A stretch of DNA of 64,000 nt, from the IMG/VR virus record IMGVR_UViG_3300042879_006196, positions 1 through 64,000 of that record. One strand, given 5' to 3'. Positions 5,398 through 62,765 of the stretch are shown in pieces. Position numbers and translations under genes: made by a program. Position 1 is the first letter of the stretch; every line of letters starts with the position of its first letter. Below the pieces are notes generated by a model. That model worked only from the letters and a program-made list of their open reading frames with translations. It had not been told where the DNA came from and ran no database searches.

Positions 5398-5400
5398 AAG

Positions 5401-5484
5401 TTATTCCTCAAATTTTATATGACCGAACAAAGTGTTGAACATTTCAGTGTAAAAATCTATGATCGCTTTTTCAAATTTCTTCAT
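5401..5484 (-). CDS. 27-aa peptide MKKFEKAIIDFYTEMFNTLFGHIKFEE
   Basis: GGAGGT Shine-Dalgarno upstream; CGTATAAT -10-like element on the - strand near 5550. Confidence 0.5.
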   Translation of the reverse strand: MKKFEKAIIDFYTEMFNTLFGHIKFEE

Positions 5485-5625
5485 GTAGTGTATTACCTCC
5501 TATTACACAATCTTTGTGTTTTTTGAAGCACTACTTTGAGCTACATTTAATTATACGGTTTTTTAATTACAAAAACCTGTTGAAAATTATGAAACTATTG
5601 ATTAGTAACTCTCGTATAAATTATT

Positions 5626-14042: not shown

Positions 14043-14111
14043 ATCACACAATCTTAATTCAATAATTTGCCCGATTTTTTCCAGATTTAACACAATCTGA
14101 TTATAATAAAA

Positions 14112-14477
14112 ATGACATTTTTTGAAAACTTAATGATAGCACATTTTATTGGAGATTGGATTCTCCAACCTTCATCAATGGGAATACAAAAATCTTCCAA
14201 TTGGAAAATTAGATTTTTGCATTGCTTAATTTACACCGCTTGTTTTTTCTGGCTTAACTGGATTGCCTGTTTGTGGATTTTTATAACCCATTTTATCATT
14301 GACTCGTATATGCCTCTATTTTGGTTTAGAAAATTAAGAGGTGATTTTAAAACCATTGAAGAATTTAAAACTTCTTTTAACACACCTGCTGGCTTTTTTA
14401 TAAATGTTGTACTTGATCAAATTTTTCACATTATCACATTTTTGCCTGTAATTTTGTCCGTAAATTACAATAAATAA
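14112..14477 (+). CDS. DUF3307-like membrane protein
   Basis: AHFIGDW.LQ, LHC.IY, THFIID, DQ.FH motifs. Confidence 0.8.
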   Translation: MTFFENLMIAHFIGDWILQPSSMGIQKSSNWKIRFLHCLIYTACFFWLNWIACLWIFITHFIIDSYMPLFWFRKLRGDFKTIEEFKTSFNTPAGFFINVVLDQIFHIITFLPVILSVNYNK

Positions 14478-14478
14478 A

Positions 14479-17400: not shown

Positions 17401-18082
17401 TTGTGTGGAGATGTATGAGATTGAAAATCAGGTGTGGGATCAGGTGAGTGATCAGGTGGAGCATCAAGTGTGGTATCAAGTGGAGCATCCTTTGTATGCT
17501 CAGGCGAGGGATCAAGTGATGAACCAGGTGTGGCTCAAGGTGTTCAGATGATTAATACAGATTGTGTTGAGATATTTGAGATTGAAGATCAGGCGTTGGA
17601 TCAGGTGAGTGATCAGGTGGAGTGGGAGGTGTGGCATCATGTGGAATATAAGGTGTGGTATAATGTGAGTAATCAGGTGAAAAACCCAGTGTGGTTTAAG
17701 GTGTTCGTATGATTAATACAGATTGTGTGGATGTGAAGGTTGAGGATCAGATTTGGCGTCAGGTGAGTTATCAGGTGGAGTGGGATACGCGGCATCATGT
17801 GGAGGTGTGGTATAATGTGAGTAAGCAGGTGAAAAACCCAGTGTGGTTTAAGGTGTTCGTATGATTAATACAGATTGTGTGGGTGTGAAGGTTGAGGATC
17901 AGATTTGGTGTCAAGTGGAAAATCAGGTGGAGTGTCAGTTGTCGTACTGGGTATGTGATGAGGTGAGATTTGATGCGGTTGATACAGTTTGGCATGAAGT
18001 GGGGTATAAGTTGTATGATCACATGGTTTTTCCAGGTTTAACATTACCCGATTATACTGGATATGATTCAAAAAAAAGATGA
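14479..18082 (+). repeat. MINTDCV micro-ORF array, block 1 (22 units by manual count)
   Basis: Repeat (A/T)TGATTAATACAGATTGTGTG at 14479, 14642, 14806, 14987, 15168, 15316, 15504, 15650, 15787, 15948, 16099, 16284, 16495, 16571, 16726, 16842, 17015, 17191, 17387, 17548, 17709, 17861; each opens a QVW-rich ORF that ends in the next repeat, except the last (17861), which runs on into the rIIA promoter. Confidence 0.95.
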
Positions 18083-22078: not shown

Positions 22079-22113
22079 AAGAGGACAATTCAAATATTGT
22101 CCTCTTTATTTTT
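22079..22113 (+). terminator. Intrinsic terminator closing the DUF6745 operon
   Basis: AAGAGGACAAT...ATTGTCCTCTT followed by a T-run. Confidence 0.8.
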
Positions 22114-22164
22114 CAATTTTTGCCCGATTTTTTCCAGATTTAACAATTATTATTTATATTAAAA

Positions 22165-25100
22165 ATGATCAACACAGATTGTGCGGAAGTAAATGAAAAA
22201 GTGAATCCTATACAGCATCATGCAATTAATCAAGTACAGTATGAATTGGAGATTGAAGTTTGGGATATGGTAAAATGTAAGGTATCAGGTGAGGTAAGTT
22301 GTCAGGTGTTCGATTGATTAATACAGATTGTGTGAAAGTGGAACATCCAGTGTGGACTCAAGTGCGAGATCAGCTGTTCTCTCAGGTGCAGTGGAAGGTG
22401 TGCCATAACGTGCTGACTCAGGTGGAGTGGAAGATGCATGATCAGGTGTGGTGGAAGGTGTTCGATTGATTAATACAGATTGTGTTAAGGTGTGGGAGAA
22501 AAAGGATAAGGTGAGGGGTCAGGTGTGTTATCAAGTGATGGGTCAGGTAGAAGATCAGGTGCATGGTCCTTTGTTTCGGGAAATGTGGTGGCAGGTGTGG
22601 TTTGAGGTTTTCAAATGATAAATACAGATTGTGTGAAGGTGAGGGAGAAAAAGATTCAGGAGTGCGATCAGGTGTATGAGCAGGTGTATGAGCAGGTGTA
22701 TTGTCAGGTGAGTAATCATGTGGAGTATCAGGTGTGGGAGCAGGTGTGGTGCAAGGTATGTAAAAAAGTGTGGTTTAAGGTCTATAATGATTAATACAGA
22801 TTGTGTGGAGGTGAGGGAGAAAAAGAATCAGGCGACTGAGCAGGTGTATGAGCAGGTGTGTGAGCAGGTGGGGTGGAATGTGGAGTATCAGGTGTGGGAG
22901 CAGGTAGAAGATCAGGTGTGGGATCGTTTGTTTTGGTACTCGCGCTTTGAGGTGTTCAAATGATTAATACAGATTGTGTGGTGAAGAAGCAGGTGTGGGA
23001 GTATGTAGAAAGTCAGGTGTTGTGGAAGGTGTATGATTGGGTGAGTGAGCAGGTGAATTGGCAAGTGGAGATTCAGTTGTGGGATAAGCTGTTTGCTCAG
23101 GAAAGACATCAGGTACGGCATCAGGTAAAAGTGAAGGTGTTCAAATGATTAATACAGATTGTGTGGAAGTTGAAAGCCATGTGAAGAATCAGGGGTTTGA
23201 TCAGGTGTGGAATCAGGTGGAACTTCAGGTGTGGGGTCAGGTGTGGGATTATTTGTGGTGGAAGGTGTGGCTTGAGGTGTTCGAATGATTAATACAGATT
23301 GTGTGTATGATTGGGTGAGTGGTGATTGGGTGAGTGATCAGGTGGAGCTTCATGTGAGGAATCAAGTGCGGGGTCAGGTGTGGGGTCAGGTGTGGGATAA
23401 GGTGCGGGATCAGGTGGAGTATCAGGTGTGGGAGCAGGTGTGGTTTGAGGTGCTCAGATGATTAATACAGATTGTGTGGAAGATCAGGTGGAGTATCAGG
23501 TGGAGTATCAGGTGGAGCTTCAGAAGTGGGGTCAGGTGTGGGATGAGGTGTGGTGGAAGGTGTGGCTTGAGGTAAGTGATCAAGTAAGGGATCAGGTGTT
23601 TTATAAGGTGTGGTTTGAGGTGTTCTATGATTAATACAGATTATGTGGTAAATAAGCAGGTGTGGTGGCATGCAGAAGATCAGGTGTTTTCGAATATGCG
23701 TGATTGGGTGTGGTGGCATGTAGAAGATCAGGTGTATGATCAGGTAAGGATATTGGTGCAGATTCATGTGTGGGATCAGGTGGGGGGTCAGGTGTATGAC
23801 CAGGTGTTCTATGATTAATACAGATTGTGTGAAGGTAAAGAAGCAGGTGTGGGAGCATGTAGAAAATCAGGTGTGGTTTGAGGTGTATGATTGGGTGAGT
23901 GAGCAGGTGAATTGGCAAGTGGAGATTCAGTTGTGGGATGAGGTGTTGTATCAGGTGTTGTGGATTAAGGTGTTTAGATGATTAATACAGATTGTGTGAA
24001 GATAAAAAATCAAATGTATGATCAGGTGGAGTGGAAGGTGTATGATCAGGAGTGGTGGTATCGGGTGAGCATTCTAGTGTTGGATCAGTTGGAGTATAAG
24101 GTGTGTAATCAGGTGTGGTGGGAGGTGTATAAGGGTGTGTGGCAGGTGTTAAAATGATTAATACAGATTGTGTGGAAGATCAGGTGTGGGATCAGGTGGA
24201 GCTTCAGGTGTGTAATCATGTGTGGTATCATGTGAGGTATCAGGCGTCTCAGCAGTTGGGGGTTAAGGTGAGAGGTCAGGTGAAATACAAGGTGAGGTAT
24301 CATGTGAGAGATCAAGTGGTGTGTGAGGTGTGGTATGATTAATACAGATTGTGTCAAGGTGAGGGAGCAAGATAAGGTGTGGGATCAGGTGTGGTGGAAG
24401 GTGCTCAAATGATTAAAACAGATATTGTGAAAGTGAAACGTGAAAATCAAATGTGTTTTAAGATTTATCACAATTTGGAACAACAAGTGCACTGGAATAT
24501 ACTTTATCTGGTGAAAGCTCAAACGAAAAATAGACTTTTTGCACAGAAGAATCTGCTGGGTAGGATTGTAGATCGCGAGATCAAAAGGCGCTCAAATGAT
24601 TAATACAGATTGTGTGGTTGTGTGGAATCAGGTGAGACATCAGGTACGGCATCAGGTAAAAGTGAAGGTGTTCAAATGATTAATACAGATTGTGTGGAGG
24701 TATGTGAGATTAATCATGTATGGACTCAGGTGAATTATAAGGTGACACATCAGGTGAAGAGAGTGGCATCTCAGGTTCACTCTGAGGTGAGACATCAGGT
24801 ACGGCATCAGGTGTGGTGTGAGGTAGAGGATCAGGTGGAGTGGAATGTGTGGAATAAGGTGCTGGGTCAGGTGTGGAATCAGGTGAGGATTCAGGTGTGG
24901 TATGATTAATACAGATTGTGTGGAAGATCAGGTGTGGGATCAGGTGGAGCTTCAGGTGTGTAATCAGGTGAGGTATCAGGTGAGGTATCAGGTGAGGGTT
25001 CAGGTGTGTGATAAGGTGAGGGGGAGGTGGTGCTACGTAAGAGTGAAGGTGTTGTTTAAGGTGTTCAGATGATTAATACAGATTGTGTGGAAGATCAGGT

Positions 25101-27430
25101 GTGGGATCAGGTGGAGCTTCAGGTGTGTAATCAGGCGAGGTATCAGGTGAGGTATCAGGTGAGGGAGGAGGTGTCTGATAAGGTGAGGGGTCAGGTGAGA
25201 TATAAGGTGAGGCATCATGTGAGAGATCAGGTGGTGTGTGAGGTGTTCTATGATTAATACAGATTGTGTAAAGGTGAGGGAGCAAGATAAGGTGTGGAAT
25301 CAGGTGCAGGATCATGTGTGGTTTGAGTTGTGGTATAAGGTGCGGGATCAGGTGAAGATTGAGGTGAGGTTTCAGGTGTGGGTTCAGGTGTTCAAATGAT
25401 AAATACAGATTGTGTGGAAGTGGAAGATGATTCAAATTTGACTAAAATGAAACATGTGTTGACTCATGTGCGCGATAGGGTGGAGGTTAGGGTGTGGTTT
25501 GCGGTGTCGGCTCTTGTGGAATGTCGGTATTGGTATGAAGTAAGAGATAATGTGTTCTAATGATTAATACAGATTGTGTGGAAGTGAAACATCCAGTGTG
25601 GGGTGAGGTGAGGGAACAGGCAAGGGTTACAATAGTTTATCATTTGTGGCATCAGGTGTGGTACCAGGTTGCGTGGGATGTAGAGGATCAGGTGTTGGAT
25701 CAGGTGTGGAATCAGGTGTTCTAATGATTAATACAGATTGTGTGGTAGCGAAGAATCTGGTGCGGAATCAAATGAGGAATCATGTACAGTATCAGGTGCA
25801 GACTCAGGTGTATGAAAAGGTAGATTATCAGGTGTGGGATAAGGTGCGATGGAAGGTGTATGCTCAGGTGCGGGATAAGGTGTTTAGATGATTAATACAG
25901 ATTGTGTGGAAGTGAGGGAGCGGGATCAGGCGTGGAAAAAAGTGCAGAATCATGTGTGGAATCAGGTGCAGGATCATGTGTGGTTTGAGTTGTGGTATAA
26001 GGTGCGGGATCAGGTGAAGATTGAGGTGTGGAATAGGGTGTGGTGGAAGGTGTTCAAATGATAAATACAGATTGTGTGAAAGATCAGGTGTGGAATCAGG
26101 TGTGGAATAAGGTGTTGAATCAGGCGTGGGGTCAGGTGGAGTATCAGGTGGAGATTCAGGTGTGGGATCAGGTATGGATTCAGGTATGGAAGGTGTGTTG
26201 TAAAATACAGAATCAGGTGTGGCATGATTAATACAGATTGTGTGGATGTATGTGATAATAATTATCAGTTTTGGTATGTAGTGTCTCAGGTTCAGGTTGA
26301 GGCAAATCAGGTGGAGATTCAGGTGTTTAGACAAGTGAGGAAACTAACGTGGGCTCAGGTAAGATATCAGGTGACACACAAGGTAATTGATCAGGTGTGG
26401 TATGATTAATACAGATTGTGTGAAAGATCAGGTGTGGAATAAGGCGCTGGATCAGAAGTGGGGTCAGGTGAGGAAACAGGTGTGTGAGCATGTATGGGAT
26501 CAGGTGTGGAATAAGGTGTGGGATCGTTTGTTTTGGGTAAGATTCAAGGTGAAGTATCAGGTGTGGCATGATTAATACAGATTGTGTGAAAGTGAGTGAG
26601 TGTGATAAGGTGCAGGATCAGGTGAGACAGCAGATGCGGGATCAGGTGAAAGATCAGGCGTTGAAGGGGTTTATTCAGGTATATTGGCAGGTGAGTAATC
26701 AGGTGGAGTATAAGGTGTGGGAGAAGGTGATCAAACAGGTACGACTTCAGGTGTGGTATGATTAATACAGATTGTGTGAAAGAGCAGGTGTGGAATAAGG
26801 TGCTGGGTCAGGTGAGATACAAGGTGAGGTATCAGGTAGAGGATAAGGTGGAGTGGAAGGTGTTAAATCAGGTATATGATAAGGTGTTTAAATTGAATTA
26901 TAAGGTGTTGAAAAAGGTGTTCAGATGATTAATACAGATTGTATAGAGATATTTGAGATTGAAGATCAGGCGTTGGATCAGGTGAGTGATCAGGTGGAGA
27001 TGGAGGTGAGGTATCAGGTGAGATATAAGGTGAGGCATCATGTGAGAGATCAGGTGTGGTGTGAGGTGTTCTATGATTAATACAGATTGTATAGAGATAT
27101 TTGAGATTGAAGATCAGGCGTTGGATCAGGTGAGTGATCAGGTGGAGATGGAGGTGTGGCATCATGTGTTGGATCAAGTTGTGGGTGAGGTGTGGTATCA
27201 GGTGTGGTATCAGGTGAATTATCAGGTGTGGTATGATTAATACAGATTGTGTGAAAGTGAAACGTGAAGATCAATTGTGTTTTAAGATTTATTATAATTT
27301 CGATCATAAAATGCACTGGGAGATGATGTATCAAGCGCATTACAAACCCCAATATCAAGCAGAATATTATTTATGCTGTAATATTTACAATAAAGGATGG
27401 AAGCAGATAACAGAGCAGATATTCAAATGA
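22165..27430 (+). repeat. MINTDCV micro-ORF array, block 2 (32 units by manual count)
   Basis: Repeats from 22165 to 27233 at about 75-230 bp spacing; first ATG lies directly behind the promoter at about 22126-22160. Confidence 0.95.
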
Positions 27431-27968
27431 TGAATCACTTCAAAGATTCCTTTTTTATGAAACATCCCACTGGACTCCGCGACAAAAAATGATCCCTCTT
27501 TAATGCAGAATAAAACACCTTTTCATCACCCTTTTTGTACCCCACACCTGACCAAAAACAAGGCTTCACACACACTAATTTATATGCCTTTCTGTTCATT
27601 TTTTACTCTATGAATTCCTATATGAACACACAATCTGAAACACGATCTCTATATCCCTAATACAATTAAGATACAATTAAAAAATCACATATTCATTATG
27701 CATTTTTTTCACCTTCCACCACCTCAAATGATAAAAAAAAAATTACACAAGATATATATGATTTTTTTCAATTTTTTCTACTCTATGAAAAATTAATGAG
27801 ATTTTTTGTCAAATCATTTTTCATCTCTGAAAAAATCATATCATTTTCTCTTTCTATTTTTTTCTGATTTTCGCCCGATTTTTCCTCATCAATTTTGCCC
27901 GATTTTTTCCAGTTTTAACATTTTCTTTTTATAATGTTTCCAAGACAAATTTCGTAGAATGTAGTGGT

Positions 27969-30900
27969 ATGATTAATATACATAATGTAGAATTGAATGA
28001 CAAGGATTACATAAAAATAAAAGATTTCATTTCTTCCCATGTAAATGAAAATGTCTGGTTTCGTGTGAATGATCAAGTGAGGAAATATTTCTGCCATAAA
28101 CACAGAGGTAAAATTTATAAGAGGATGTTCAAATGATTAATATAGATTGTGTGAAGGTATTTGATATGAAACAGGTGTGGGATGAGCTGACTTTTCAAGT
28201 GAGTGATCCAGTGGATAAGCATGTGCTGTCTGACGTGTGGTATCAAGTGAGGGATAAGGTGTGGATTCAGGTACGATTTAAGGTGTGGATTAGGGTGTTG
28301 TTATGGTTAATACAGATTGTGTGAAGGTGAGGGTGCTGAATCAGGTGAGTGATCAGGTGCGGGATCAAGTGAACTATCCAGAGGCAAATCATGTGCTGTC
28401 TGACGTGTGGCATCAAGTGAGGGATCAGGTGTGGATTCAGGTACGATTTAAGGTGTGGATTAGGGTGTTATGGTTAATACAGATTGTGTGAAGGTATTTA
28501 ACCTAATACAAGCGTGGGATGAACTAACAACTTATCAGGTAAGGTATTCAGTGAAATATCATGTGCTGCATAATCTCTGGTATGAAGTGGGGGCTGGGGT
28601 GAAGATTGAGGTGAGGCATAAGGTGTGGTTTGATTAATACAGATTGTTTGAAGTAAAAGTGATTAGATATCAGGTAAGTGATAAGTTGTGGGAGTTGGTG
28701 ATCAGACAGGTATGGAATCAGGTGAGGTATAATGGTCGGTGGCATCAGGTAGAGGGGAGGGTGCGGGATCGGTTGTTCAAATGATTAATACAGATTGTGT
28801 GGAAGTGAATTATAGGGGGTGGATTCAGGTACGATTTAAGGTGTGGTTTGAGGTGAGAGATCGGGTGTGGCTTGAGGTAAGTGAACATCCAGTGTGGAGT
28901 CAAATTTTTTTCCATCAGGTGTTTGAAAAGGTGGAGTGCGAAGTGTGGTATGATTAATATAGATTATGTGAGGGTGAGGAATCAGGTGGGTGAGCAGGTG
29001 AGCTGTCAGGTGTGGAATCAGGTGTTTGAGCATTTAGAAGATCAGGTAGAGTATCAAGTGTATAATCAGATTTTGTCTGAGTTGCATGATCAGTTGTATT
29101 ATAAGGACTGGGAGGTGTGTTATAAAATACGGCAAAAGGTGTGGTATGATTAATACAGATTGTGTGAAAGTGGAGAATCATGGTTGTTGGCAGTTTAGGG
29201 ATCAGGTGTGGTATCAAGTGGAGCAACAGGTGTGGCACAAGGTGTCTAATGGGGTTCGGGATAGGGTGTGGATTAAGGTGTTCAGATGATTAATACAGAT
29301 TGTGTGAAGGTATTTGAACTAAATCAATTGTGGAATCAAGTGAGTGATCAGGTGGAGTGGAAGGTGCGTGATGAGGTAGAGTATAAGGTGTGGCTTCAGG
29401 TAAGATACAAGGTGTGGGATCAGGTGCAGTTTTGGGTAAGATTCAAGGTGAAGTATCAGGTGTGGCATGATTAATACAGATTGTGTGGAAGTGAAACATC
29501 CAGTGTGGACTCAGGTGCAGAATCAGGTATATTGGCAGGTGAGTAAACAGGCATGTCATAAGGTGGAGTGGAAGGTGTGGCATAAGGTGTGTAGTGGGGT
29601 GCGGGAATGGGTTGTGTATCAGGTGTGGGATCGGGTTGTGTATCTAACGTTAAATGATTAATACAGATTGCGTGAAGGTATGTGAGATTAATCATGTATG
29701 GACTCAGGTGAATTATAAGGTGACACATCAGGTGAAAAGAGTGGCATCTCAGGTTCGCTTTGAGGTGATGAGTCAGGTGTGGGATCAGGTGTATTGGATG
29801 ATGTGGCAAAAGGTGGTGTGGTATGATTAATACAGATTGTGTGGAAGTGGAACATAAAGTGTTGGAGACGATGTGGTATCATATGTGGGAAAAGGTGTGC
29901 TATGGGCTGATATTTCAGGTATGTAGTGAAGTGAGGCTTAAAGTGAGGCTTAAGGTTTTTGTTTGAGGTGTGGTATGATTAATACAGATTGTGTGGAGAT
30001 GGTGCGTCCAGTGTGGACTCAGGTTCGAAATCAACTGTTTACTCAGGTGCAGAATCAGGTAGATCATAAGGTGAGGGCTCAGGTGTTCTTGAACGTGTGG
30101 TCTAAGGTGTGGGATCAGGGGTGGTATCAGGCGTGGGATAAGGTGATAAATGATTAATACAGATTTTGTGGAAGTGAAAAATCAAATGTGGGGTGAGGTG
30201 AGGGATCATGCGTGGTTGAAGGTGTGGTATCTGGCGAGGAATCAGGTGAGGAACCAGGTAAATGATCAGGTAAGTGGTGAGGTGATTAGTCTGCTTGTGT
30301 ATCAGGTGTGGCATCAGGTGTTGTATCAGTTGACTGATATGGTTTGGAATAAGGTGATAAATGATTAATACAGATTGTGTGGAAGTGAAAAATCATCCAC
30401 ATATGCAGGTAAGACAGCAGATGAGACACAGGGCGTGGTTTCAGGTGTGGAATCAGTTGGTTCCTATGGTTTGTGATCATGTGTGGAAGCACATGTATAT
30501 TCAGGTGCAAATTCAAGTGTTGGATAAAGTGATGTATGGATTGTATGAAGAAGGTGAACAATCAGGTGTGGCATGATTAATACAGATTATGTGGGCTTAC
30601 TCGGAGCGGCAAAAACTCAGGCTCAAAATGAAATTAACAGTATTGTGCAACTTGAAGTGTGGGAGAAGGTGATCAGTCAGGCATGGCTTAACACGTGGCA
30701 AAAGGTGTGGTATGATTAATACAGATTGTGTGAAAGTGGGGAATCCAGTGGGGAATCAGTTGGGGTTTGAGGTGAATTTTCAGGCGAGGTGGCAAGTGAT
30801 GTCTCATGTGGAATATGTGGTGCGGCATGATGTGAGGGATCAGCTGGAGTGCAAAGTTTGGTATATGTGGTGGAAGGTGTGCAAATGATTAATACAGATT

Positions 30901-33178
30901 GTGTGAAAGTGGAAAATCAAGTGTTTAATGAGGTGCAGAATCAGGTGTGGTGGAAGGTACATGCTCAGGTGTTCCGTAAGCTGAGAGGTAAGGAATGGTT
31001 GGCTGAGTTGTGGCAACAGAAAACATATGTTGTCACGTATCAGAATCAGGTTCTACTTAAAGTAAAACTTCAGGTGTGGTATGATTAATACAGATTGTGT
31101 GGAATTGTATAATGAGGTTTCGAATCAAGTGAGGGATCAGGCGTGGGCTCATGGACTTCAGGCGTGGTGGCAAGTGAGGAATAAGATAAGGTATCAGCCT
31201 TGGCATCAAATTAGTAGGAAGGTGAGAAAACAGGTATGGTATGAGGTGTGGTATGATTAATACAGATTGTGTGAAAGTGTATAATGAGGTGCAGAATCAA
31301 GTGAGGGATCATGTGTGGATTAATACAGATTGTGTTAATACAGATTATGTTGAATTGTATTATGAGGTTTCGATTCAAGTGAGGGATCAGGTGTGGTATC
31401 AGGCGTGGGATAAGGTTTGGGATCAAGTGAGGAATAAGATGAAGTATCAGGCTTGGCATCAAATTAGTAGGAAGGTTAGAAAACAGGTATGGTTTGAGGT
31501 GTAGTATGATTAATACAGATTTTGTGAAAGTGGAAATTTGGGTGTGGGATCAGCTAAAGAATCATGTGAAAAATGAATTTAGTAGTGAAGTGTGGCAACA
31601 GGTAAATGTTAGGATGTGCGATCAGGTGTGGGAGAAGGTGATCAGACAGGTACGATATAAGGTGTGGTATGATTAATACAGATTGTGTGAAGATATATAA
31701 TAGTAAAAATCCAATGATTGATCATATGTGGGATCTAGTGACAACCCAATCGTTTTATGAGTTTTTGAATTATGTGCTTTTCAAGGTAAAGAGACAGATA
31801 TGGAATAAGGTGTGGCTTGAGGTGTTCAAATGATTAATACAGATTGTGTGGAATTGAGCCATCACGCGCTGGATCAAGTGAGCAACAATACGCGGTATCA
31901 GCTGGAGTGGAAGGTATGGGCTCATGTGGATCATGCGGTAAAACAGATTGGTTTGCCGTTTAAGGTAAAGTTGCAGGTATGGAATAAGGTGATAAATGAT
32001 TAATACAGATTGTGTAAGGAATAAGATGAAGCAGAAGCACTTGGATTTTAGACATCAAACGCAAAAGTATGTATGGGCTAACTTTATATTAGGGCTTGAG
32101 TATCGTGTGAGACTTAATGTCTGTAGTAAGCTTACGAGTCAGATATATTATCAGGTGAGTGTATATATTTATAATAAGGTGTATGATGATTAATACAGAT
32201 TGTGTGCAGATAAATGATGATGAATATCAGGTAAAAAGTCAGAAGTATAAACATATATCTAATGAGATGTATCTTGAGGTGTGGTATGAGATGTCTCAAA
32301 AAGTATTATATTTTTCTGTGCGTGAGTTGTGCATTAAGGTGTTTAGATGATTAAAATAGATTGTGTGGAGATTAAGGTTCAACATCACATTTGTCTTGTG
32401 CACATTCATGTTTCTAATCAGGCTTATCAGGTGTGGGACAAGAATTGTAAAGGAGTGTGTTTTCCAAGGCGTCAGTTGTGGTTTGAGGTGTTTAGATGAT
32501 TAAAACAAATTGTGTGGAGATTAAGGTTCAAGATCAGATTTGGTTTGTGGATCATTATTTGTCCAATGAAATGTGGTGTCAGGCTTTGAACAATACAGTG
32601 CTTTGGGCAATTCCTAATGTGGTAATTTATAATGTGCGCGATAAAGCTTGGATCAAGGTGTTTAGATGATTAACACAGATTGTGTGAGAGTGGACAGTCT
32701 TGAAATAAAGCATGAAGTTGTTTTTGAGATGAGGAATAAAGTGTGGAATCAAATATATTATCATGTGTCTTGTAAGGTTTGGAGGCTGGTAAAGCTTCAG
32801 GTGTTTGGGTGTTCAGATGATTAATACAGATCGTGTGGATTTGAAAAATCATGATAATCTACATTATCATCTTACTAATTCACCAAGATGGTATGTGTGG
32901 GATCAAATTAATCTTCAAGTGAGGAATCATGTTTCTAAGGTAAGGTTTAAGTTGTGGGATGAGATGTTAAAATGATTAATACAGACTGTGTGAATATAAG
33001 GAATGGTGAAAAAATCCAAATGGATTTGCAGAACCATGTGGATATAGTTGATATCCATTCTGTTCGAAATTCTATTTATTATCAAGTAAGAAGATTAAGT
33101 AATGTAACTTTGATAAGATATAAATTACAAAAGATTTTTTTTGATTATTTGTCTTATGATTTATGTGGGATATTGTGA
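27969..33178 (+). repeat. MINTDCV micro-ORF array, block 3 (30 units by manual count)
   Basis: Repeats from 27969 to 32972; promoter at about 27903-27935; first and last units are the most diverged. Confidence 0.95.
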
Positions 33179-33350
33179 AAAAAAGTGGGAATCAGATTGT
33201 GTTAGATTGTGGTAAATTTATGGATAAAAAGTGGGAATTAGATTGTGTTAGATTGTGGTAAATTTATGGATAAAAAGTGGGAATTAGATTGTGTTAGATT
33301 GTGGTAAATTTATGGATAAAAAGTGGGAATTAGATTGTGTTAGATTGTGT
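33179..33350 (+). repeat. 46-bp tandem repeat, about 3.6 copies
   Basis: GTGGGA at 33185, 33231, 33277 and 33323; each unit carries two AGATTGTG. Confidence 0.92.
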
Positions 33351-33537
33351 TTTTATCGTTGCTCCTGCACACTCACCCCTCACACAATCTGAATTACTAT
33401 ATGAAGCCGATACACAATCTGAGTAATACTGGGGGTCATGGCTCCACAGACGTGCGGTTAAAAACTAAAATCAGATTGTGTATTTACGATCTGAATCAGA
33501 TTGTGTGTTTAGTTTTCGAGCAAATTTTTTTTCGAGC

Positions 33538-33601
33538 AAATGCCCGCATTAACGGGCGGGCAAATTTTTCGAGGAAATGCCCGCATTCGCGGGCGGGCAA
33601 A
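33538..33601. repeat. Two GC-rich palindromic direct repeats
   Basis: TGCCCGCATTAACGGGCGGGCA and TGCCCGCATTCGCGGGCGGGCA. Confidence 0.8.
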
Positions 33602-33918
33602 AATAAAAAAAAATCTGAAACTTTTCGAGATTGTGTATCGTATAATAATATGGAGGTTAAGCTTTTTCACTCTTCTGAACTTTGCTACGAGTAAATGTGC
33701 ACTGCAAGAAAGAAGTGTAGGAAGAATAAGTTTACCTTCTCCGCATCATCTACCAAGTTGTAGAAGGAGCTAGTAACTGCCTTAGGTTTAGGTCGTTGCT
33801 TTTAAGACACAGGTCTAATAGAACAGACACCATCTGCGGGTGGGGAAGTGAGGGGCAGAACCTTGCGTGTCATATACAATAAAATCAATGTGAGTTAATC
33901 GCCACGTTGAAAGTTGGA

Positions 33919-33944
33919 AGGGGGGTTGATTACCCCCTTTTTTA
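33919..33944 (+). terminator. Intrinsic terminator
   Basis: AGGGGG...CCCCCT followed by a T-run. Confidence 0.75.
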
Positions 33945-33946
33945 TT

Positions 33947-34225
33947 ATGAACGATTTCGAGGCTATTGACAGTATAGATTTTAATCACTCTTTTGAGATT
34001 TGGGAAGAGGGTGTGACTTTTTTGTTACCTGGTGATCACATGTTATTTGTAAAGCATGAGGAGCTAGATTATCTCAATGGAAATTCAGATTGTGTTTCAA
34101 AGATTGTTGATTCAGAAAATTTAAATTTCTTTATGGAATTGTTTGCGAAGGCATTTGAGGTTCGTGAGCAGAAGAGGAAAATTTTTCGAGCGAATTTGAG
34201 GCTAATCACACAATCTGGAAAGTAG
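33947..34225 (+). CDS. Hypothetical protein
   Basis: ORF. Confidence 0.6.
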   Translation: MNDFEAIDSIDFNHSFEIWEEGVTFLLPGDHMLFVKHEELDYLNGNSDCVSKIVDSENLNFFMELFAKAFEVREQKRKIFRANLRLITQSGK

Positions 34226-34263
34226 GTTTTTTCCAGGTTTAACACAATCTGATTATAATAGTC

Positions 34264-48846: not shown

Positions 48847-48945
48847 TCCCCCTCCAAAGGGGAGGCAGACTGTTTTTTCCAGGTTTAACATATTATTTTT
48901 ATAATACAAGGAAGATTCAATTTAGATTGTGTATAATTAAAGAGT

Positions 48946-49021
48946 GGCTCATAGGACAACTGGTGGAGTCGCCGCCCTGTCACGGCGGAGATGGAGGGTT
49001 CAATGCCCTCATGGGTCGCCA
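48946..49021 (+). tRNA. trnD: tRNA-Asp(GUC)
   Basis: CCGCC-CTGTCAC-GGCGG anticodon arm, T-arm, CCA. Confidence 0.9.
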
Positions 49022-49027
49022 ACATAC

Positions 49028-49102
49028 TGACACCTAGCTCAACGGTAGAGCTTTTCGCTGTTAACGAAGGGGTTATAGGTTCGAATCCTATGGTGTCAGC
49101 CA
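49028..49102 (+). tRNA. trnN: tRNA-Asn(GUU)
   Basis: TGACACC/GGTGTCA acceptor stem, CTGTTAA loop, GGTTCGAATCC, CCA. Confidence 0.92.
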
Positions 49103-49105
49103 TAA

Positions 49106-49180
49106 GCTGGATTAGCTCAGCGATAGAGCAACCGCCTTGTAAGCGGTAGGTCAAGAGTTTGAATCTCTTATCCAGCTCCA
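49106..49180 (+). tRNA. trnT: tRNA-Thr(UGU)
   Basis: GCTGGAT/ATCCAGC acceptor stem, ACCGC-CTTGTAA-GCGGT, CCA; atypical TTTGAAT T-loop. Confidence 0.88.
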
Positions 49181-49235
49181 CATCCACACAATCTCACCAA
49201 TTTTCCAGGTTTAACACAATCTGATTATAATAGAT

Positions 49236-59171: not shown

Positions 59172-59648
59172 ATGAGCCATCTTTACGAGGATTTAGATTC
59201 AGCTTTCTCCGCACTCTATGATTATAGTTGTGAGGGCGGTTCTTACGGGGTTGATGAAGATGATAATTCCAAAAGCCACCATTATAAAAGTGTCGATGGC
59301 ATGATTCTTATGGAATTGAGCAGGGATTGCTTGGTTTCAACAATTACCGTAGGTGATGAATTCCGTGTAGTGCGTAACCTTGACTGGGAAGACTGGTATC
59401 ACTTTGTAACTGGTGACGAAGAAAGTTTCATTGCATTTGTTTCTGAGTTGATTCCACCGCCTAAAAATACATGGCATCATACTTGCGAAAAATGCTACAA
59501 GCAAAACTCTAGTGTTTCAATGATTTATGACCCATTTGAGTATGATATAAATAACCGCGAGGTGGTACTGGCAACATTGTGTTCAGATTGTTTTAGTGAG
59601 GACTATGGTCTTCAACAAGAATTACACAATCTTGCAATGGAAGTGTAA
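59172..59648 (+). CDS. Hypothetical protein with C-terminal CxxC pairs
   Basis: TATAATAGATAT-ATG start; CEKC...CSDC. Confidence 0.7.
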   Translation: MSHLYEDLDSAFSALYDYSCEGGSYGVDEDDNSKSHHYKSVDGMILMELSRDCLVSTITVGDEFRVVRNLDWEDWYHFVTGDEESFIAFVSELIPPPKNTWHHTCEKCYKQNSSVSMIYDPFEYDINNREVVLATLCSDCFSEDYGLQQELHNLAMEV

Positions 59649-59711: not shown

Positions 59712-59945
59712 ATGACAGTACAAGAACTAATTGAACAACTACAAAAGATTGAAGACAAAAGCAGAGAGTGCATAATAGATGATGGTGGCGGCGGTGCATT
59801 TTATGATGTTGAATCTGTTTTTACTGAGAGAGAGTATGTACTAATCTCAAGATATTCAAGCGAGTATAATAATTCAATATATTCAAACGAGTATAATAAT
59901 TCAACAGTAGTAATGTGTGAAGAATATTCAGACAAGTATTGCTGA
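59712..59945 (+). CDS. MTVxELIE-family small protein
   Basis: MTVQELIEQLQKIEDKSREC. Confidence 0.75.
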   Translation: MTVQELIEQLQKIEDKSRECIIDDGGGGAFYDVESVFTEREYVLISRYSSEYNNSIYSNEYNNSTVVMCEEYSDKYC

Positions 59946-60020
59946 ATGTTCTTTTAGCTTTCCCCTCCAAAAGGGAGGCAGATTGTTTTTTCCAGGTTTA
60001 ACATTTCCTGATTATAATAG

Positions 60021-60410
60021 ATGTAAGAACATTGAAAAGAGAATAAGAATCGCCCGAATTAAGTATCGGAAAGAGGAGCTGACCCAACAGTGAACTCTAA
60101 AAAACGCTGGGTAATTGGGTAAGACGAGCCACACGTCATAAAGAAAGTGGTGAAGCGGGAAACAAATGAAAGTGAAAGGCTTTCTGGGTTTTTAACTTGG
60201 CATCCGTGTATAAGGGGTATGCTCCCACCGAGGCGATTTTTAATCTTATATCTCTTACAGAATAATGTAAAAAGTTTAGGGGACGCCCTATAGGGACTCA
60301 CGTAACCCGAAATACGTGGTTGAACAATCATGTTCCGATGAGGCAAGTACATCGTTAAATCAATCTGCTAGGGAGGTGGGCTAATTACCCACCCCCGCAT
60401 GTTTTTAAGA
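60021..60410 (+). ncRNA. Candidate structured ncRNA cassette of about 390 nt
   Basis: Full promoter module but no ORF; hairpins CACGTA/TACGTG, CGATG/CATCG, GTGGG/CCCAC, TTACA/TGTAA. Confidence 0.5.
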
Positions 60411-60474
60411 TTCCCCCTCCAAAGGGCAGGCAGATCGTGTTTTCCAGGTTTAACATTTTCGAGTTATAATAGGT

Positions 60475-60741
60475 ATGAGCAGACACTCAGCACAAACAAA
60501 AGATGGAAGAAGCATGGTTATCGGTTTTGATGCCCCCTTAAGCGAATACTTTATTCAGGTATATGGGGACAATGATGAGTTGGTGGCTGACTTTTCTTCA
60601 TCAGGAATGTCAATGGTAAAAATGCACCCACCAATGTCAAATTCAAAAATTCTGGAAACTATTCAGTCAATCATGAGCGATGATGACCAGAAGCGACTGG
60701 CTCCTCAGATTGAACTACTATGCTTGGATTTACCTTTCTGA
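60475..60741 (+). CDS. Hypothetical protein
   Basis: Cassette ORF. Confidence 0.7.
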   Translation: MSRHSAQTKDGRSMVIGFDAPLSEYFIQVYGDNDELVADFSSSGMSMVKMHPPMSNSKILETIQSIMSDDDQKRLAPQIELLCLDLPF

Positions 60742-60810
60742 GCAGATTCCCCCTCCAAAGGGGCGGCAGCCCGTTTTTTCCAGGTTTAACACAATCTGAT
60801 TATAATAGAT

Positions 60811-61209
60811 ATGAGCGAAAAAAACCTAGTTTTTCATGTTTTCGGATTTAACATCATTCAGCGACCAGTTCACAGTTACCTTGATGGCAGAGCGGGAAAG
60901 CTAAGAAGACTTCCACAAATACAAGTAGGTGAAACTGTTAGTTATTATGGGCATTCTCACACAGAGTACGGAAGATGTATAGAAGATGATATTTTTGACA
61001 CAGTAGACGAGGCTTTGGAAGTAGCTAAAACCCGTTTAGAGCATGAAAAATTGTCTTTGGCAGAAAAAATCCAATACCTACAAGAAAAATTAGCAGAGTG
61101 TGAAAATCAAGAAATAAAAATAAAACTTTATGAAGACATTCTGAAGGAAACAGCAATTAAAGAAATGAAAAGACTTGCCAAGGAGAATAACCTTGAAGTT
61201 TCATTTTAA
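60811..61209 (+). CDS. Hypothetical protein
   Basis: Cassette ORF. Confidence 0.7.
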   Translation: MSEKNLVFHVFGFNIIQRPVHSYLDGRAGKLRRLPQIQVGETVSYYGHSHTEYGRCIEDDIFDTVDEALEVAKTRLEHEKLSLAEKIQYLQEKLAECENQEIKIKLYEDILKETAIKEMKRLAKENNLEVSF

Positions 61210-61223
61210 TTAAAAATAAAAAT

Positions 61224-61303
61224 TGGGCATGTTGCATTGTTAAGAATATTTGGAAAATCACCTTTTAGGTTTAAGTGCGGGTTCAAATCCCACTGCTCCA
61301 CCA
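61224..61303 (+). pseudogene. Degenerate tRNA-like element
   Basis: GCGGGTTCAAATCCCAC T-arm and GCTCCACCA 3' end; no recognisable D-arm or anticodon arm. Confidence 0.55.
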
Positions 61304-61366
61304 ATTCCCCCTCCAAGAGGGAGTCAGCCCGTTTTTTCCAGGTTTAACATAATCTGATTATAATAG

Positions 61367-61750
61367 ATGTACCTACAAGGTAACATCAAGGAAAAAAAGA
61401 TGCCAAAATCAGCCCTATATCAATCAGCAATCACAAATCGAAAACTCCTCACTGACCACCTCACGTTAATCGAGGAATATCTTGAAGCAGGAGAAGCGAC
61501 CACAGAAATTTACTTCTATGGTGCGAACAACTCCATCATCAGAAAATACACAAAAACCTCTAAGTGGTCAACATCAATTGGCAAGCAGAGAGTCAGAACA
61601 AGCCATGAGATTTTTGTCTCCATTAATACAGGCTTTCTTCCTCGTGGCACAAAGCGAATGAAGGTGAAAAGCCCATTTGTTGAAAATGAAACCAAGACTG
61701 TTTTGAGTAGTATGCCAGTTACAGTTCAATGCCAATCAATTGCCATCTAG
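61367..61750 (+). CDS. Hypothetical protein
   Basis: Cassette ORF; alternative start at MPKS. Confidence 0.65.
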   Translation: MYLQGNIKEKKMPKSALYQSAITNRKLLTDHLTLIEEYLEAGEATTEIYFYGANNSIIRKYTKTSKWSTSIGKQRVRTSHEIFVSINTGFLPRGTKRMKVKSPFVENETKTVLSSMPVTVQCQSIAI

Positions 61751-61829
61751 TAAGATGGCAATTGATTCCCCCTCCAAAGGGGAGGCAGAAAATTTTTTCC
61801 AGGTTTAACATTTCCTGATTATAATAGAT

Positions 61830-62099
61830 ATGGGTAAGAACCATAAAATCAAAGAAACCTTCGAAGTAGGTAGAAACTTCATCTCAATCTTCCCTGAAGA
61901 ATCCTTCCTTGAGCAACTTGTTCTTGAGGGTGATGTTCTCAAGTTCAAGATGAAATCTGGTGCAAGTGTTTACAGCACTACCATCACTGATACCATGAAG
62001 CGAGAATTGCTCGCTGTTGCCAGAGAAGGTGGCTCAATCGGCACCTTTTACAATACAAGGCTTCGACCCTTGCCTATAACAAAGTCAGATTCTTTCTGA
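61830..62099 (+). CDS. KTSC-like domain protein
   Basis: SFL......L...KSG..VY........GGSIG.FYN..LR. Confidence 0.55.
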   Translation: MGKNHKIKETFEVGRNFISIFPEESFLEQLVLEGDVLKFKMKSGASVYSTTITDTMKRELLAVAREGGSIGTFYNTRLRPLPITKSDSF

Positions 62100-62164
62100 A
62101 TGATAGGGGAATAAAATCCCCTATCTAAAATTTTCCAGGTTTAACAAAACCTGATTATAATGAA

Positions 62165-62304
62165 TGTAAGAACGAAAGTTCTACAAGGTGACGACTCTGC
62201 ACCTTGAGGGGAACGGAATTGCCCCTTGAAACCAGTAGCTCCTGTCAAATGGAGTGACGACATCTATTAAGTGCTTTGGGAATAGTTTCTAGAAAGAGGC
62301 TATT
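62165..62304 (+). ncRNA. Candidate small structured RNA cassette of about 140 nt
   Basis: Promoter but no ORF; AGAAC-GAAA-GTTCT, CAAGGTG/CACCTTG, AGGGG/CCCCT, CTCC/GGAG and GAATAG/CTATTC stems in series. Confidence 0.6.
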
Positions 62305-62366
62305 CCCCCTCCAAGAGCCCCGCCGCCCGCTTTTTCCAGGTTTAACACAATCTGATTATAATAGAT

Positions 62367-62765
62367 ATGACATTAGAACAACTGCAACAAATCTTTCCAG
62401 GTGCTACGGCTGATACTTGGCATCAGCACCCAAACGGTGGTGGATGGGTGCAAAATACTGCAAAGGTATATGAAACTGCTTGGGTTGGCAAAGATGCCGT
62501 AGTGTATGGGGATGCTGTGGTGCTTTGGAATTCTTCTATATCGGGGAATGCTAGGGTGTTGGCTGACGGGTATGGGTCTGGAGGAGAAGAAATGACCTTA
62601 GAAAAAGCGTTGGAGCGGATTGAGTTCCTTGAGAACGCTCTGAACGGAGCGATTGGTTCCTGCATTAAGGATGAGGAATGTGATTTCACGAAAAAGCCAG
62701 AACTGGTGGAATACATTAAGCAAAACTGGTTGAATGCATTAATCAAAGAAATAGATAATGAATAA
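62367..62765 (+). CDS. Protein with a short beta-helix-like repeat fused to an MTLE.AL.RIEFLENAL module
   Basis: HPNGGGWV.NTA.V...AWVG.DAVVYGDA; second half similar to 62758..62964. Confidence 0.65.
   Translation: MTLEQLQQIFPGATADTWHQHPNGGGWVQNTAKVYETAWVGKDAVVYGDAVVLWNSSISGNARVLADGYGSGGEEMTLEKALERIEFLENALNGAIGSCIKDEECDFTKKPELVEYIKQNWLNALIKEIDNE

What the first reader, a model, noticed from the sequence alone, without database searches (positions are those of the whole stretch)
60021..60410. Cassette with a full promoter module but no ORF: candidate large ncRNA
Seen: bounded by the standard modules like any gene cassette, but ATG TAA closes at once. Many local stems are present: CACGTA-N8-TACGTG, CGATG-N9-CATCG, GTGGG-N7-CCCAC, TTACA-N6-TGTAA, GAAAG..CTTTC. 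It starts with the same ATGTAAGAAC as the 62165 element. Inference: a roughly 390-nt structured RNA that I cannot assign to a known family.
Basis: partly seen in the sequence, partly recalled or inferred. Interest (0 to 1): 0.62.

Follow-up and report, generated by a model that had tools for sequence, protein, structure and literature searches.

The report
New structured RNA gene in jumbo phage
This ORF-less cassette is a real, separately promoted gene for a roughly 385-nt structured non-coding RNA; its 5' half belongs to a previously uncatalogued RNA family shared by several uncultivated freshwater jumbo phages, and its function is still unknown.

Summary
Window 60021-60410 lies between two of about 80 near-identical promoter/terminator modules in the early region of a 347-kb jumbo phage. 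It has no conserved reading frame on either strand.

"ATG TAA" is not a start-stop pair. The module ends in ...TATAATAGAT and the RNA begins GUAAGA at 60023.

Homologues exist in lake metagenomes. They show indels that break frames, compensatory base-pair changes, and a folding z-score of -3.9. Contigs of one freshwater metatranscriptome cover the element.

The RNA is modular:
- **5' domain (about 60045-60241).** A 10-bp closing helix P1 and two invariant boxes, UCGCCCGAAUnAAAUAUCGGA and CCACCGAGGCGA, enclose a variable hairpin-rich interior.
- **3' domain.** Four hairpins specific to this lineage, then a terminator.

The clamp domain recurs in at least seven lineages. One is a 379-kb phage whose terminase is only 41-54% identical. 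Some genomes carry two copies. The domain usually stands alone, twice precedes an ORF, and always has tRNA genes 1-8 kb away.

Rfam 15 gives no match. No Ro60, reverse transcriptase or L7Ae partner was found.

My best reading is a stand-alone early RNA whose clamp is a binding platform. The mechanism is inferred, not shown.

The parts
59959..59978 (+). Terminator-like hairpin of the upstream inter-cassette module. It ends the preceding 77-aa cassette.
   Evidence: Flagged by the terminator scan. The module is repeated throughout the window.
59989..60018 (+). Promoter module TTTCCAGGTTTAACA-N9-TATAAT.
   Evidence: The scan gives 10 of 12 matches to the sigma-70 consensus. There are 62 copies in the window, all on the + strand, against 0.9 expected, and 83 in the whole genome.
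60023..60406 (+). Inferred RNA A transcript, about 385 nt, from G60023 to the U-run after the terminator hairpin.
   Evidence: The start is inferred from the register of 582 leaderless cassettes and of leadered cassettes that begin RTAA. Metatranscriptome contigs cover 60076-60390. Neither end has been mapped.
60023..60028 (+). 5'-terminal GUAAGA. It can pair with UCUUAU (60244-60249) or UCUUAC (60253-60258).
   Evidence: Group 2 shows a partial co-change, A-U to G-C at one pair. The same GUAAGA forms the 5' hairpin of RNA B. This pairing is tentative.
60045..60054 (+). P1 closing helix, 5' strand (AAGAAUCGCC). It pairs with 60232-60241.
   Evidence: 5 invariant pairs. Pair 6 is A-U in 6 sequences and U-A in 4. 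Another pair is G-U in 6 and U-A in 2. 89.5% of cells are paired, against 33-45% when the partner is slid. The G-U pair fits + strand RNA only.
60050..60070 (+). Invariant 5' box UCGCCCGAAUUAAGUAUCGGA. It includes the small hairpin CGA...UCG (P2).
   Evidence: Invariant columns in the 11-sequence alignment A3. The box was found in G005 and G006 by pattern scan.
60078..60120 (+). Hairpin GCUG/CAGU (60078-60091). Its loop ACCCAA (60082-60087) can pair with UUGGGU (60115-60120), giving a possible pseudoknot.
   Evidence: The loop pairing co-varies: ACCCAA:UUGGGU becomes AACCAA:UUGGUU in L217 (columns 64/102). The stem GCUG/CAGU becomes AAAG/CUUU in L157 (read).
60129..60150 (+). Helix CCAC (60129-60132) / GUGG (60147-60150).
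   Evidence: CUAC/GUAG in L168 (columns 113/132). CCAU/AUGG at the equivalent place in group 3, L268 (my reading).
60164..60205 (+). Optional 42-nt hairpin insertion.
   Evidence: Absent as one block in L157 and L206. It shares the 11-mer ACUUGGCAUCC with the G005 copy L278.
60214..60241 (+). Last interior hairpin GGG-GUAUGCU-CCC, then the invariant 3' box CCACCGAGGCGA (60225-60236), then the P1 3' strand (60232-60241).
   Evidence: A hairpin directly precedes ACCGAGGCGA in nearly every member.
60277..60354 (+). Lineage-specific 3' domain of four hairpins: 60277-60290, 60299-60318, 60322-60335, 60336-60354.
   Evidence: Nearly identical in all group 1 homologues, with about four variable positions in 130 nt. 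Absent from groups 2 and 3 and from G005 and G006.
60371..60406 (+). Terminator-like hairpin GGGAGGUGGG-CUAAUUA-CCCACCCCC, then GCAUG and UUUUU.
   Evidence: The simple scan did not flag it because the U-run starts 5 nt after the stem. The module's own hairpin and T-run follow at 60410-60445.
62166..62300 (+). It has four hairpins and its own terminator and is not homologous to RNA A.
   Evidence: 5 of 30 pairs change on both sides. Folding z = -2.9. Eleven distinct homologues lie in related contigs.

Best explanation
**What is shown**
- Window 60023-60406 is a genuine, independently transcribed non-coding RNA gene in the early, host-takeover region of a 347-kb uncultivated freshwater jumbo phage.
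- It is one of the few cassettes, among about 80 leaderless single-gene cassettes, that carries no ORF.
- Its 5' roughly 200 nt form a closed domain. A 10-bp helix P1 brings together two invariant boxes, UCGCCCGAAUnAARUAUCGGA and CCACCGAGGCGA. These enclose a variable, hairpin-rich interior of 115-300 nt.
- The clamp domain is the conserved unit of a new RNA family found in several jumbo-phage lineages.
- In this phage a lineage-specific 3' domain of four hairpins and a terminator is fused to it.

**What is inferred**
- The RNA acts as a stand-alone, trans-acting early RNA.
- The invariant clamp is a binding platform for a conserved partner. That partner could be a phage or host protein, or a host RNA machine linked to tRNA metabolism or defence.
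- The variable interior and 3' hairpins act as scaffold or cargo.
- UCGG in the 5' box can pair either with the neighbouring CCGA (hairpin P2) or with the CCGA of the 3' box (extending P1). All three words are invariant, so a two-state clamp is possible.
For: **Genomic setting**
- Promoter module directly upstream and terminator hairpin downstream.
- The host record is a 347-kb virus with terminase, portal, DNA polymerase and other phage genes.

**Non-coding**
- Frames are broken in the homologues.
- No Pfam or PHROG hit for the 97-aa antisense ORF.

**Structure**
- Folding z = -3.9.
- P1 co-variation across 11 sequences.
- Compensatory changes in two interior helices.
- G-U pairs fit the + strand only.

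**Family**
- Group 1 homologues are 84-100% identical. Group 2 shares only the 5' domain.
- Further members: group 3 (L268), two copies in the 379-kb phage G005 and two in G006.
- G005's terminase is 41-54% identical to this phage's.

**Stand-alone use**
- No ORF follows before a terminator or the next module in the window copy, L268, L275 and L278.
- An ORF follows only in group 2 and L274, and the two ORFs are unrelated.

**Presence in RNA data**
- Contigs of metatranscriptome run X18 cover 60076-60390 in two sequence variants, with the highest depth of the 4-kb stretch.

**Context**
- tRNA genes lie within 1-8 kb of every copy.

**Phage-specific so far**
- Absent from 401 sampled Bacteroidota genomes, except for one phage-like 3.3-kb contig binned in a MAG.
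Against: - No partner has been identified. No protein family is consistently adjacent to the element across lineages.
- No transcript ends are mapped. The RNA evidence consists of assembled contigs from one small library, and DNA carry-over cannot be excluded.
- The invariant boxes never vary, so co-variation cannot tell the two clamp pairings apart.
- Interior helices are supported by only one to three independent changes each.
- Two lineages place the domain in front of an ORF, which fits a cis-acting leader equally well.
- The terminator hairpin is followed by a U-run only after 5 nt.
Confidence: 0.55

Rival explanations
1. A cis-acting 5' leader element, acting as a riboswitch-like sensor, a processive antiterminator of the put/nut kind, or a stabilising 5' structure. 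It would sit 25-45 nt after the transcription start and control whatever is transcribed downstream. In this phage the regulated ORF would have been lost, or the target would be read-through into the next cassettes.
For: - The domain is always close to the 5' end, just after a promoter.
- In L274 its P1 3' strand is followed within about 20 nt by a Shine-Dalgarno-like AGAGGA and an ATG.
- In group 2 a 137-140-aa ORF follows 62 nt later.
- The invariant UCGG has two invariant alternative partners, as in a switch.
- Every cassette ends in a terminator, so an antitermination device would have something to act on.
Against: - Five of seven lineages have no ORF behind the domain.
- The two ORFs that do follow are unrelated and of unknown function.
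- The interior varies from 115 to 300 nt with differing numbers of hairpins, which is unusual for a ligand-binding aptamer.
- No Rfam riboswitch or leader model matches.
- The window copy carries its own terminator.
Confidence: 0.22
2. A catalytic RNA or an RNA processing signal. It would be either a new self-cleaving or self-processing ribozyme, or a structure recognised by RNase P, RNase Z or RNase III that defines RNA ends in the tRNA-rich early region.
For: - The invariant junction nucleotides around a closing helix resemble the cores of small ribozymes.
- tRNA genes lie near every copy.
- The word GCGGGAAA resembles the P element of group I introns. This is my own recollection, not a test.
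Against: - No ribozyme, intron or RNase P model of Rfam matches at E <= 10.
- No CCA end and no T-loop.
- GCGGGAAA is missing from group 3, G005 and G006.
Confidence: 0.1
3. A DNA-level element, such as a replication origin primed by a promoter-driven transcript (ColE1 or T4 oriF style), or a recombination or protein-binding site. On this view the RNA fold would be incidental.
For: - An ORF-less, promoter-driven cassette resembles transcript-primed origins.
- The two boxes could be protein-binding sites.
- The - strand also folds better than shuffles, z = -2.8.
Against: - The G-U pairs of P1 and of the hairpins become C-A mismatches on the other strand.
- Compensatory changes keep pairing, not sequence.
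- Two copies per genome at unrelated positions.
- The element is present in an RNA library.
- The GC-skew profile shows no feature here.
Confidence: 0.06
4. A decayed protein-coding cassette, that is, a pseudogene with no function.
For: - It occupies a normal cassette slot.
- Cassette content is mosaic between relatives.
Against: - No frame or protein similarity on either strand.
- The sequence is 83-94% conserved between phages whose shared cassettes range from 65 to 97%.
- The 3' domain is nearly invariant.
- The boxes are invariant across phages with 41-54% terminase identity.
Confidence: 0.03

Closest known systems
GOLLD and ROOL large non-coding RNAs (Rfam RF01998, RF03087)
   Same: Large, elaborately folded RNAs of unknown biochemical function. 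They are carried by phages and prophages and often sit next to tRNA genes. They were first found by comparative analysis of metagenomes, including lake water (my knowledge of the literature). RNA A is likewise phage-borne, has tRNA genes a few kb away, and is known only from metagenomes.
   Different: No sequence or structure match to either model. RNA A is smaller, at about 385 nt with a conserved unit of about 150-200 nt. Conservation is concentrated in a terminal clamp rather than spread over a large core.
Box C/D-type or Y-RNA-type architecture (a terminal helix juxtaposes two conserved boxes that bind a protein; the interior is variable)
   Same: The conserved 5' box and 3' box are brought together by a terminal helix. 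The interior varies in length and sequence between members.
   Different: The boxes do not match C/D or Ro-binding sequences. No L7Ae-family protein and no TROVE/Ro60 protein is encoded in G000, G005 or G006. This is an analogy of layout only.
Riboswitch and leader RNAs (for example cobalamin, T-box) and phage antitermination RNAs (HK022 put, lambda nut)
   Same: A position close to the 5' end, a closing P1 helix, and alternative pairings of an invariant word. Two family members precede an ORF.
   Different: No Rfam match. Most members have no downstream ORF. The downstream ORFs share no gene family. The interior is not conserved.
tmRNA and tRNA-like RNAs of huge phages
   Same: Huge phages often carry tRNAs and tmRNA. 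RNA A is of tmRNA size and lies in a tRNA-rich region.
   Different: ARAGORN and RF00023 find no tmRNA here. There is no T-arm, no CCA end and no tag frame. The only tmRNA-like signal, at 61279-61291, belongs to a tRNA-gene remnant 0.9 kb away.

Membership tests
Any Rfam 15 family (4227 covariance models) | Score at or above the family's gathering threshold, or at least a weak hit at E <= 10. | tested here: not met
   on the window and on the group 2 copy gave no match on 60000-60430, even with permissive filters.
tmRNA | tRNA-like domain (acceptor stem, T-arm, 3' CCA) and a tag reading frame. | tested here: not met
   ARAGORN finds 5 tRNAs and no tmRNA. RF00023 gives only a 13-nt hit, at 61279-61291, outside the element.
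RNase P RNA | Conserved regions CR-I to CR-V forming helix P4. | tested here: not met
   No hit to any RNase P model. Resemblances such as GGAAAG and GGUAAGA are short words that I noted by eye.
Group I intron | Conserved P3-P8 core, and insertion within a host gene with flanking exons. | tested here: not met
   No Intron_gpI-type hit. The element has its own promoter and terminator and no flanking exons. The P-like word GCGGGAAA is absent from other family members.
Riboswitch / cis-regulatory leader | Located in the 5' UTR of the regulated gene, with a conserved aptamer and an expression platform. | tested here: inconclusive
   The window copy ends in a terminator with no ORF. Two of seven lineages have an ORF behind the domain.
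Y RNA / YrlA | Ro60 (TROVE) partner encoded nearby, and a Ro-binding helix. | tested here: not met
   PF05731 is absent from G000, G005 and G006, while the control genomes score. No Rfam Y RNA hit.
Retron msr-msd, DGR or group II intron RNA | Adjacent reverse transcriptase. | tested here: not met
   PF00078 is absent from G000, G005 and G006.
K-turn RNP (box C/D-like) | L7Ae-family protein and a K-turn formed by the two boxes. | tested here: not met
   PF01248 is absent. The boxes lack the tandem G-A geometry in the correct register (my reading).
GOLLD / ROOL | Match to the family covariance model. | tested here: not met
   No hit. Only the phage and tRNA context is shared.
Independent bacterial-type transcription unit | Promoter upstream, terminator downstream, and evidence of RNA. 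| tested here: met
   Promoter at 59989-60018. Hairpin plus U-run at 60371-60406. Metatranscriptome contigs at 60076-60390. These are contigs only, so the ends are not mapped.

The most novel reading that the evidence does not exclude
The clamp (P1 plus the two invariant boxes) would be the handle of a new class of jumbo-phage ribonucleoprotein or RNA machine. A single conserved partner would recognise the clamp. The highly variable interior would carry lineage-specific cargo, such as decoy, guide or scaffold hairpins. The RNA would be deployed in the first minutes of infection to disarm or re-programme a host system linked to tRNA or RNA metabolism.
Probability: 0.2. Interest if true: 0.85.

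Novelty: new variant of a known kind. Interest (0 to 1): 0.66.

Why it matters
**Why the RNA matters**
- Phage-encoded structured RNAs are few, and most have unknown function. GOLLD and ROOL are the best-known examples.
- This one has a clear transcription unit and a compact invariant core of about 33 nt in two boxes.
- It has members in distantly related jumbo phages and several copies per genome.
- That makes it a tractable new target for RNA structure and function work, including R-scape, chemical probing, pull-downs and cryo-EM.

**Why the setting matters**
- The early region is built from about 80 near-identical promoter/terminator modules that drive leaderless single-gene cassettes.
- At least three kinds of ORF-less RNA cassette are interspersed among them.
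- This suggests that uncultivated freshwater jumbo phages use more RNA-based host-takeover functions than current protein-centred annotation shows.

Tried and rejected
**Searches that found nothing**
- Exact 27-mer of the 3' domain in IMG/VR: no hit.
- blastn of 59900-62400 against 50,697 deposited phage genomes: no hit.
- Group 1/2-specific 5' box in IMG/VR: none.
- The same box in 185,579 species genomes: one phage-like MAG contig and two chance hits.
- 5' box in 401 Bacteroidota genomes: only that MAG contig. One-mismatch hits were at control level and lacked the 3' box.

**Searches that were unspecific or fell outside the clade**
- A short promoter pattern in IMG/VR gave only single chance hits.
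- Terminase relatives G001-G004 are fragments lacking most of the early region. Only G002 overlaps it, and it holds RNA B but not RNA A.
- Contigs fetched through distant homologues of the 238-aa neighbour (P0055, P0049, P0039, P0007) belong to other phages without the element.

**Ideas tested and dropped**
- The group 2 downstream ORF has no relatives beyond its own cluster and no domain. It gives no clue to function.
- Antisense targets of RNA A in its own genome: best matches of 13 nt are no better than shuffles.
- No protein neighbour is shared across lineages.
- Y RNA, retron and K-turn RNP were rejected because the partner protein is absent. RtcB is present only in G005.

**Limits of the structure work**
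- RNAalifold across groups 1 and 2 gave an unreliable interior because the middle cannot be aligned. I therefore claim only P1 and the three co-varying helices.
- No covariance model was built, because regex and nhmmer searches of all held sequence had already recovered every member.

**Literature**
- Searches found no description of this phage group or of the RNA.

Full report
**1. Setting**

The window is the first 64 kb of a 347,392-bp virus record with an estimated completeness of 99%. The record encodes a DNA polymerase, terminase, portal, RecJ-like exonuclease, ribonucleotide reductase and DnaB-like helicase. It is therefore a jumbo phage. Its GC content is about 33%.

No deposited phage is close. 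The best terminase match among deposited genomes is 27% identical.

The first 68 kb hold 83 copies of a module, all on the + strand. The module consists of a hairpin, a T-run, TTTCCAGGTTTAACA, 9 nt, then TATAATAGAT.

In most cassettes the module is followed at once by ATG, so the mRNAs are leaderless. In the window phage and 120 related metagenome loci, 582 of 676 cassettes are of this type.

**2. The observation**

- a module at 59989-60018;
- the next module from about 60410;
- no ORF;
- the five named stems;
- the word ATGTAAGAAC, shared with the element at 62164.

One point needs correcting. The module normally ends ...TATAATAGAT and is followed by ATG. Here it is followed by GTAAGA. The apparent ATG-TAA is the module's AT joined to the RNA's GUAA.

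Leadered cassettes in this phage group start RTAA in the same register. I therefore infer the transcription start at G60023.

The + strand RNA folds with z = -3.9 against dinucleotide shuffles. The - strand gives z = -2.8.

**3. Coding or not**

The longest + strand ORF is 48 aa. A 97-aa ORF lies on the - strand, whereas all genes of the region are on the + strand.

Neither ORF has a Pfam or PHROG hit.

In the homologues the antisense ORF loses its start (L168), is cut to 35 aa (L217), or ends differently (L157). The + strand ORF changes its C-terminus through a 17-nt insertion. Across groups 2 and 3 no frame is shared.

**4. Homologues**

IMG/VR and deposited phage genomes gave nothing at first. 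Scanning JGI metagenomes for the promoter module returned 120 loci from lake-water samples. Within them I found three sets of sequences:
- a 100% identical copy;
- group 1 relatives at 96, 90 and 84% identity;
- a divergent group 2, which shares only the 5' roughly 225 nt and is followed by a 137-140-aa ORF. One group 2 copy lies on a 3.3-kb contig binned into a Bacteroidetes MAG.

A further member came from fetching contigs through homologues of a neighbouring 238-aa protein. This is group 3 (L268). It has a different promoter variant, its own 3' hairpins and a terminator.

A generalised 5' box pattern then found two more sources:
- two copies in a complete 378,848-bp phage, G005;
- two copies in a 75.9-kb contig, G006.

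G005's terminase is only 41-54% identical to the window phage's.

The family so far has 11 distinct sequences in seven lineages.

**5. Anatomy**

*The clamp.* The alignment of all members (A3) shows two invariant blocks. The first is UCGCCCGAA-nn-AA-R-UAUCGGA, at window 60050-70. The second is CCACCGAGGCGA, at 60225-36. Everything between them differs in sequence and in length.

The blocks are joined by helix P1 (60045-54 with 60232-41):
- Five pairs never vary.
- The sixth is A-U in six sequences and U-A in four.
- Another is G-U in six and U-A in two.
- 89.5% of cells pair, against 33-45% when the partner strand is slid by one to three columns.

*Interior helices.* Within group 1, three interior helices show compensatory changes:
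- CCAC/GUGG becomes CUAC/GUAG in L168, and CCAU/AUGG at the equivalent place in group 3.
- Loop ACCCAA pairs with UUGGGU and becomes AACCAA with UUGGUU in L217.
- Stem GCUG/CAGU becomes AAAG/CUUU in L157.

The last two together would form a pseudoknot.

A 42-nt hairpin (60164-60205) is an optional insertion, absent from L157 and L206.

*Two possible pairings of UCGG.* The invariant UCGG can pair with the CCGA next to it, forming a small hairpin. It can also pair with the CCGA of the 3' box, extending P1. Minimum-energy folds of different members choose either option. Because nothing varies there, I cannot decide between them.

*The 3' domain.* It runs from about 60277 to 60354 and has four hairpins. 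It is nearly identical in all group 1 phages and absent elsewhere. It is followed by a GC-rich hairpin and a U-run at 60371-60406.

**6. Expression**

DNA of the stretch occurs in at least 14 lake-water metagenome runs from separate studies.

In one small freshwater metatranscriptome (X18, 35 million letters), four contigs lie inside 60076-60390. They represent two sequence variants, and one of them is the L217 type. They give the highest depth of the 4-kb stretch. No contig crosses into a neighbouring cassette.

This shows presence in an RNA library. It does not give strand, ends or level, and DNA carry-over is possible.

**7. What it is not**

- No Rfam 15 model matches either the window copy or the group 2 copy at E <= 10.
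- ARAGORN finds no tmRNA.
- No Ro60, reverse transcriptase or L7Ae-family gene is present in the three phage records that hold the element. RtcB occurs only in G005.
- RNA A has no complementarity to its own genome beyond chance.
- No protein neighbour is shared between lineages.
- The 5' box is not found in 401 sampled Bacteroidota genomes, apart from the phage-like MAG contig.

**8. Interpretation**

*Shown:*
- a promoter-driven, terminator-ended, non-coding, structured and conserved element;
- a new family defined by P1 and two invariant boxes;
- a modular build.

*Inferred:*
- It is a stand-alone early RNA. Five of seven lineages have no ORF behind the domain, and the window copy has its own terminator.
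- The invariant clamp is a binding platform for a conserved partner. About 33 invariant nucleotides persist across phages whose terminases have diverged to about 50% identity. That argues for recognition by something conserved rather than for a merely structural role.
- tRNA genes lie within 1-8 kb of every copy. This recalls GOLLD and ROOL, but it is context, not mechanism.

The main rival is a cis-acting leader, either a switch or an antiterminator. Its support is the position close to the 5' end, the two ORF-linked members and the alternative pairings.

I put about 0.85 on "real ncRNA gene of a new family". I put about 0.35-0.4 on the trans-acting platform reading.

**9. The 62164 element (RNA B)**

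RNA B is a separate family. It is about 135 nt long, with four hairpins and a terminator. Eleven distinct homologues were found, and 5 of 30 pairs change on both sides.

It shares with RNA A only the initial GUAAGA. In RNA B this word forms the 5'-terminal stem. In RNA A it can pair with UCUUAU or UCUUAC just after P1.

**10. Housekeeping**

No alternative genetic code was used.

Noticed in passing
window 1-64000 (modules listed), continuing to G000:68200: About 80 near-identical modules, all on the + strand. Each has a hairpin, a T-run, TTTCCAGGTTTAACA, 9 nt, then TATAATAGAT. Most drive a single small leaderless gene whose ATG starts 5 nt after the -10 box. In related lake contigs 582 of 676 cassettes are leaderless. 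In many modules a 9-bp inverted repeat, CAGATTGTG...CACAATCTG, brackets the -35 region. Which polymerase reads these promoters is unknown.
   Followed up: partly
window 62164-62300: RNA B is a second ORF-less cassette: a four-hairpin small RNA with compensatory changes in 5 of 30 pairs and 11 distinct homologues. G002 (L015:2391-2540) has RNA B but no RNA A.
   Followed up: yes
window 61279-61303: A 3' remnant of a tRNA gene (T-arm, acceptor strand and CCA) lies just behind the 132-aa ORF. It is conserved in L015, L198, L229 and L235. In run X15 a variant contig continues upstream with letters identical to the anticodon arm of the window's tRNA-Lys (table 7). An intact tRNA therefore sits there in some relatives.
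   Followed up: partly
window about 14100-18000 and 22100-34200: Long stretches have a GC skew of 0.4-0.6 and no long ORF. One 6.3-kb cassette, 27936-34229, has a longest ORF of 115 aa. They consist of tandem units of about 170 nt. Each unit begins ATGATTAATAYAGATTGTGTGAAGG and encodes a small protein of about 55 aa rich in W, V, Q and D. The same array is present in L147. Their function is unknown.
   Followed up: partly
L217:8346-8655, L157 (rc 5271-5584), L229:365-565, and G000 near 64750: A third ORF-less or leadered cassette type (RNA C) begins RTAAGAAACAATTAGCATTGGCGA... It is conserved in many related contigs. I did not analyse it further.
   Followed up: no
window 48906-49201: The cluster of three tRNA genes (Asp, Asn, Thr) is itself one cassette behind a standard promoter module. 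tRNA-Met (13968) and tRNA-Lys (56829) stand alone.
   Followed up: no
L266:3014-3500 (ENA ERZ650304 contig, a more distant phage): The first part of a 1.3-kb stretch without called genes, next to a T4-type RNA ligase gene, holds three repeats of GAGTCTCAATTC...TAATTGAGTGGTG with variable spacers. This may be another RNA array.
   Followed up: no
L273:6890-7100 and L272:400-640 (G005, 379-kb phage): The cassettes after both G005 copies of the clamp domain are also ORF-less and GC-rich. One contains GGCGGUGAAAGUCCGC. G005 uses a different repeated module, AATCGG-N6-CCGAT, then AAAAATCCCC and a T-run. It appears to carry several uncatalogued RNAs. Rfam at gathering threshold finds only tRNAs there.
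   Followed up: partly
window 59172-59648: The 158-aa ORF two cassettes upstream is the best-conserved cassette between relatives, at 91-97% nucleotide identity. Three independent metatranscriptome runs cover it (X17, X18, X19). It has no Pfam or PHROG hit.
   Followed up: no
window 61367-61403: This cassette starts TATAATAGAT|GTACCTACAAGG..., in the RNA-type register. An A-rich leader then runs to an ATG at 61401. The 127-aa ORF called from the ATG at 61367 may really start at the internal ATG.
   Followed up: no
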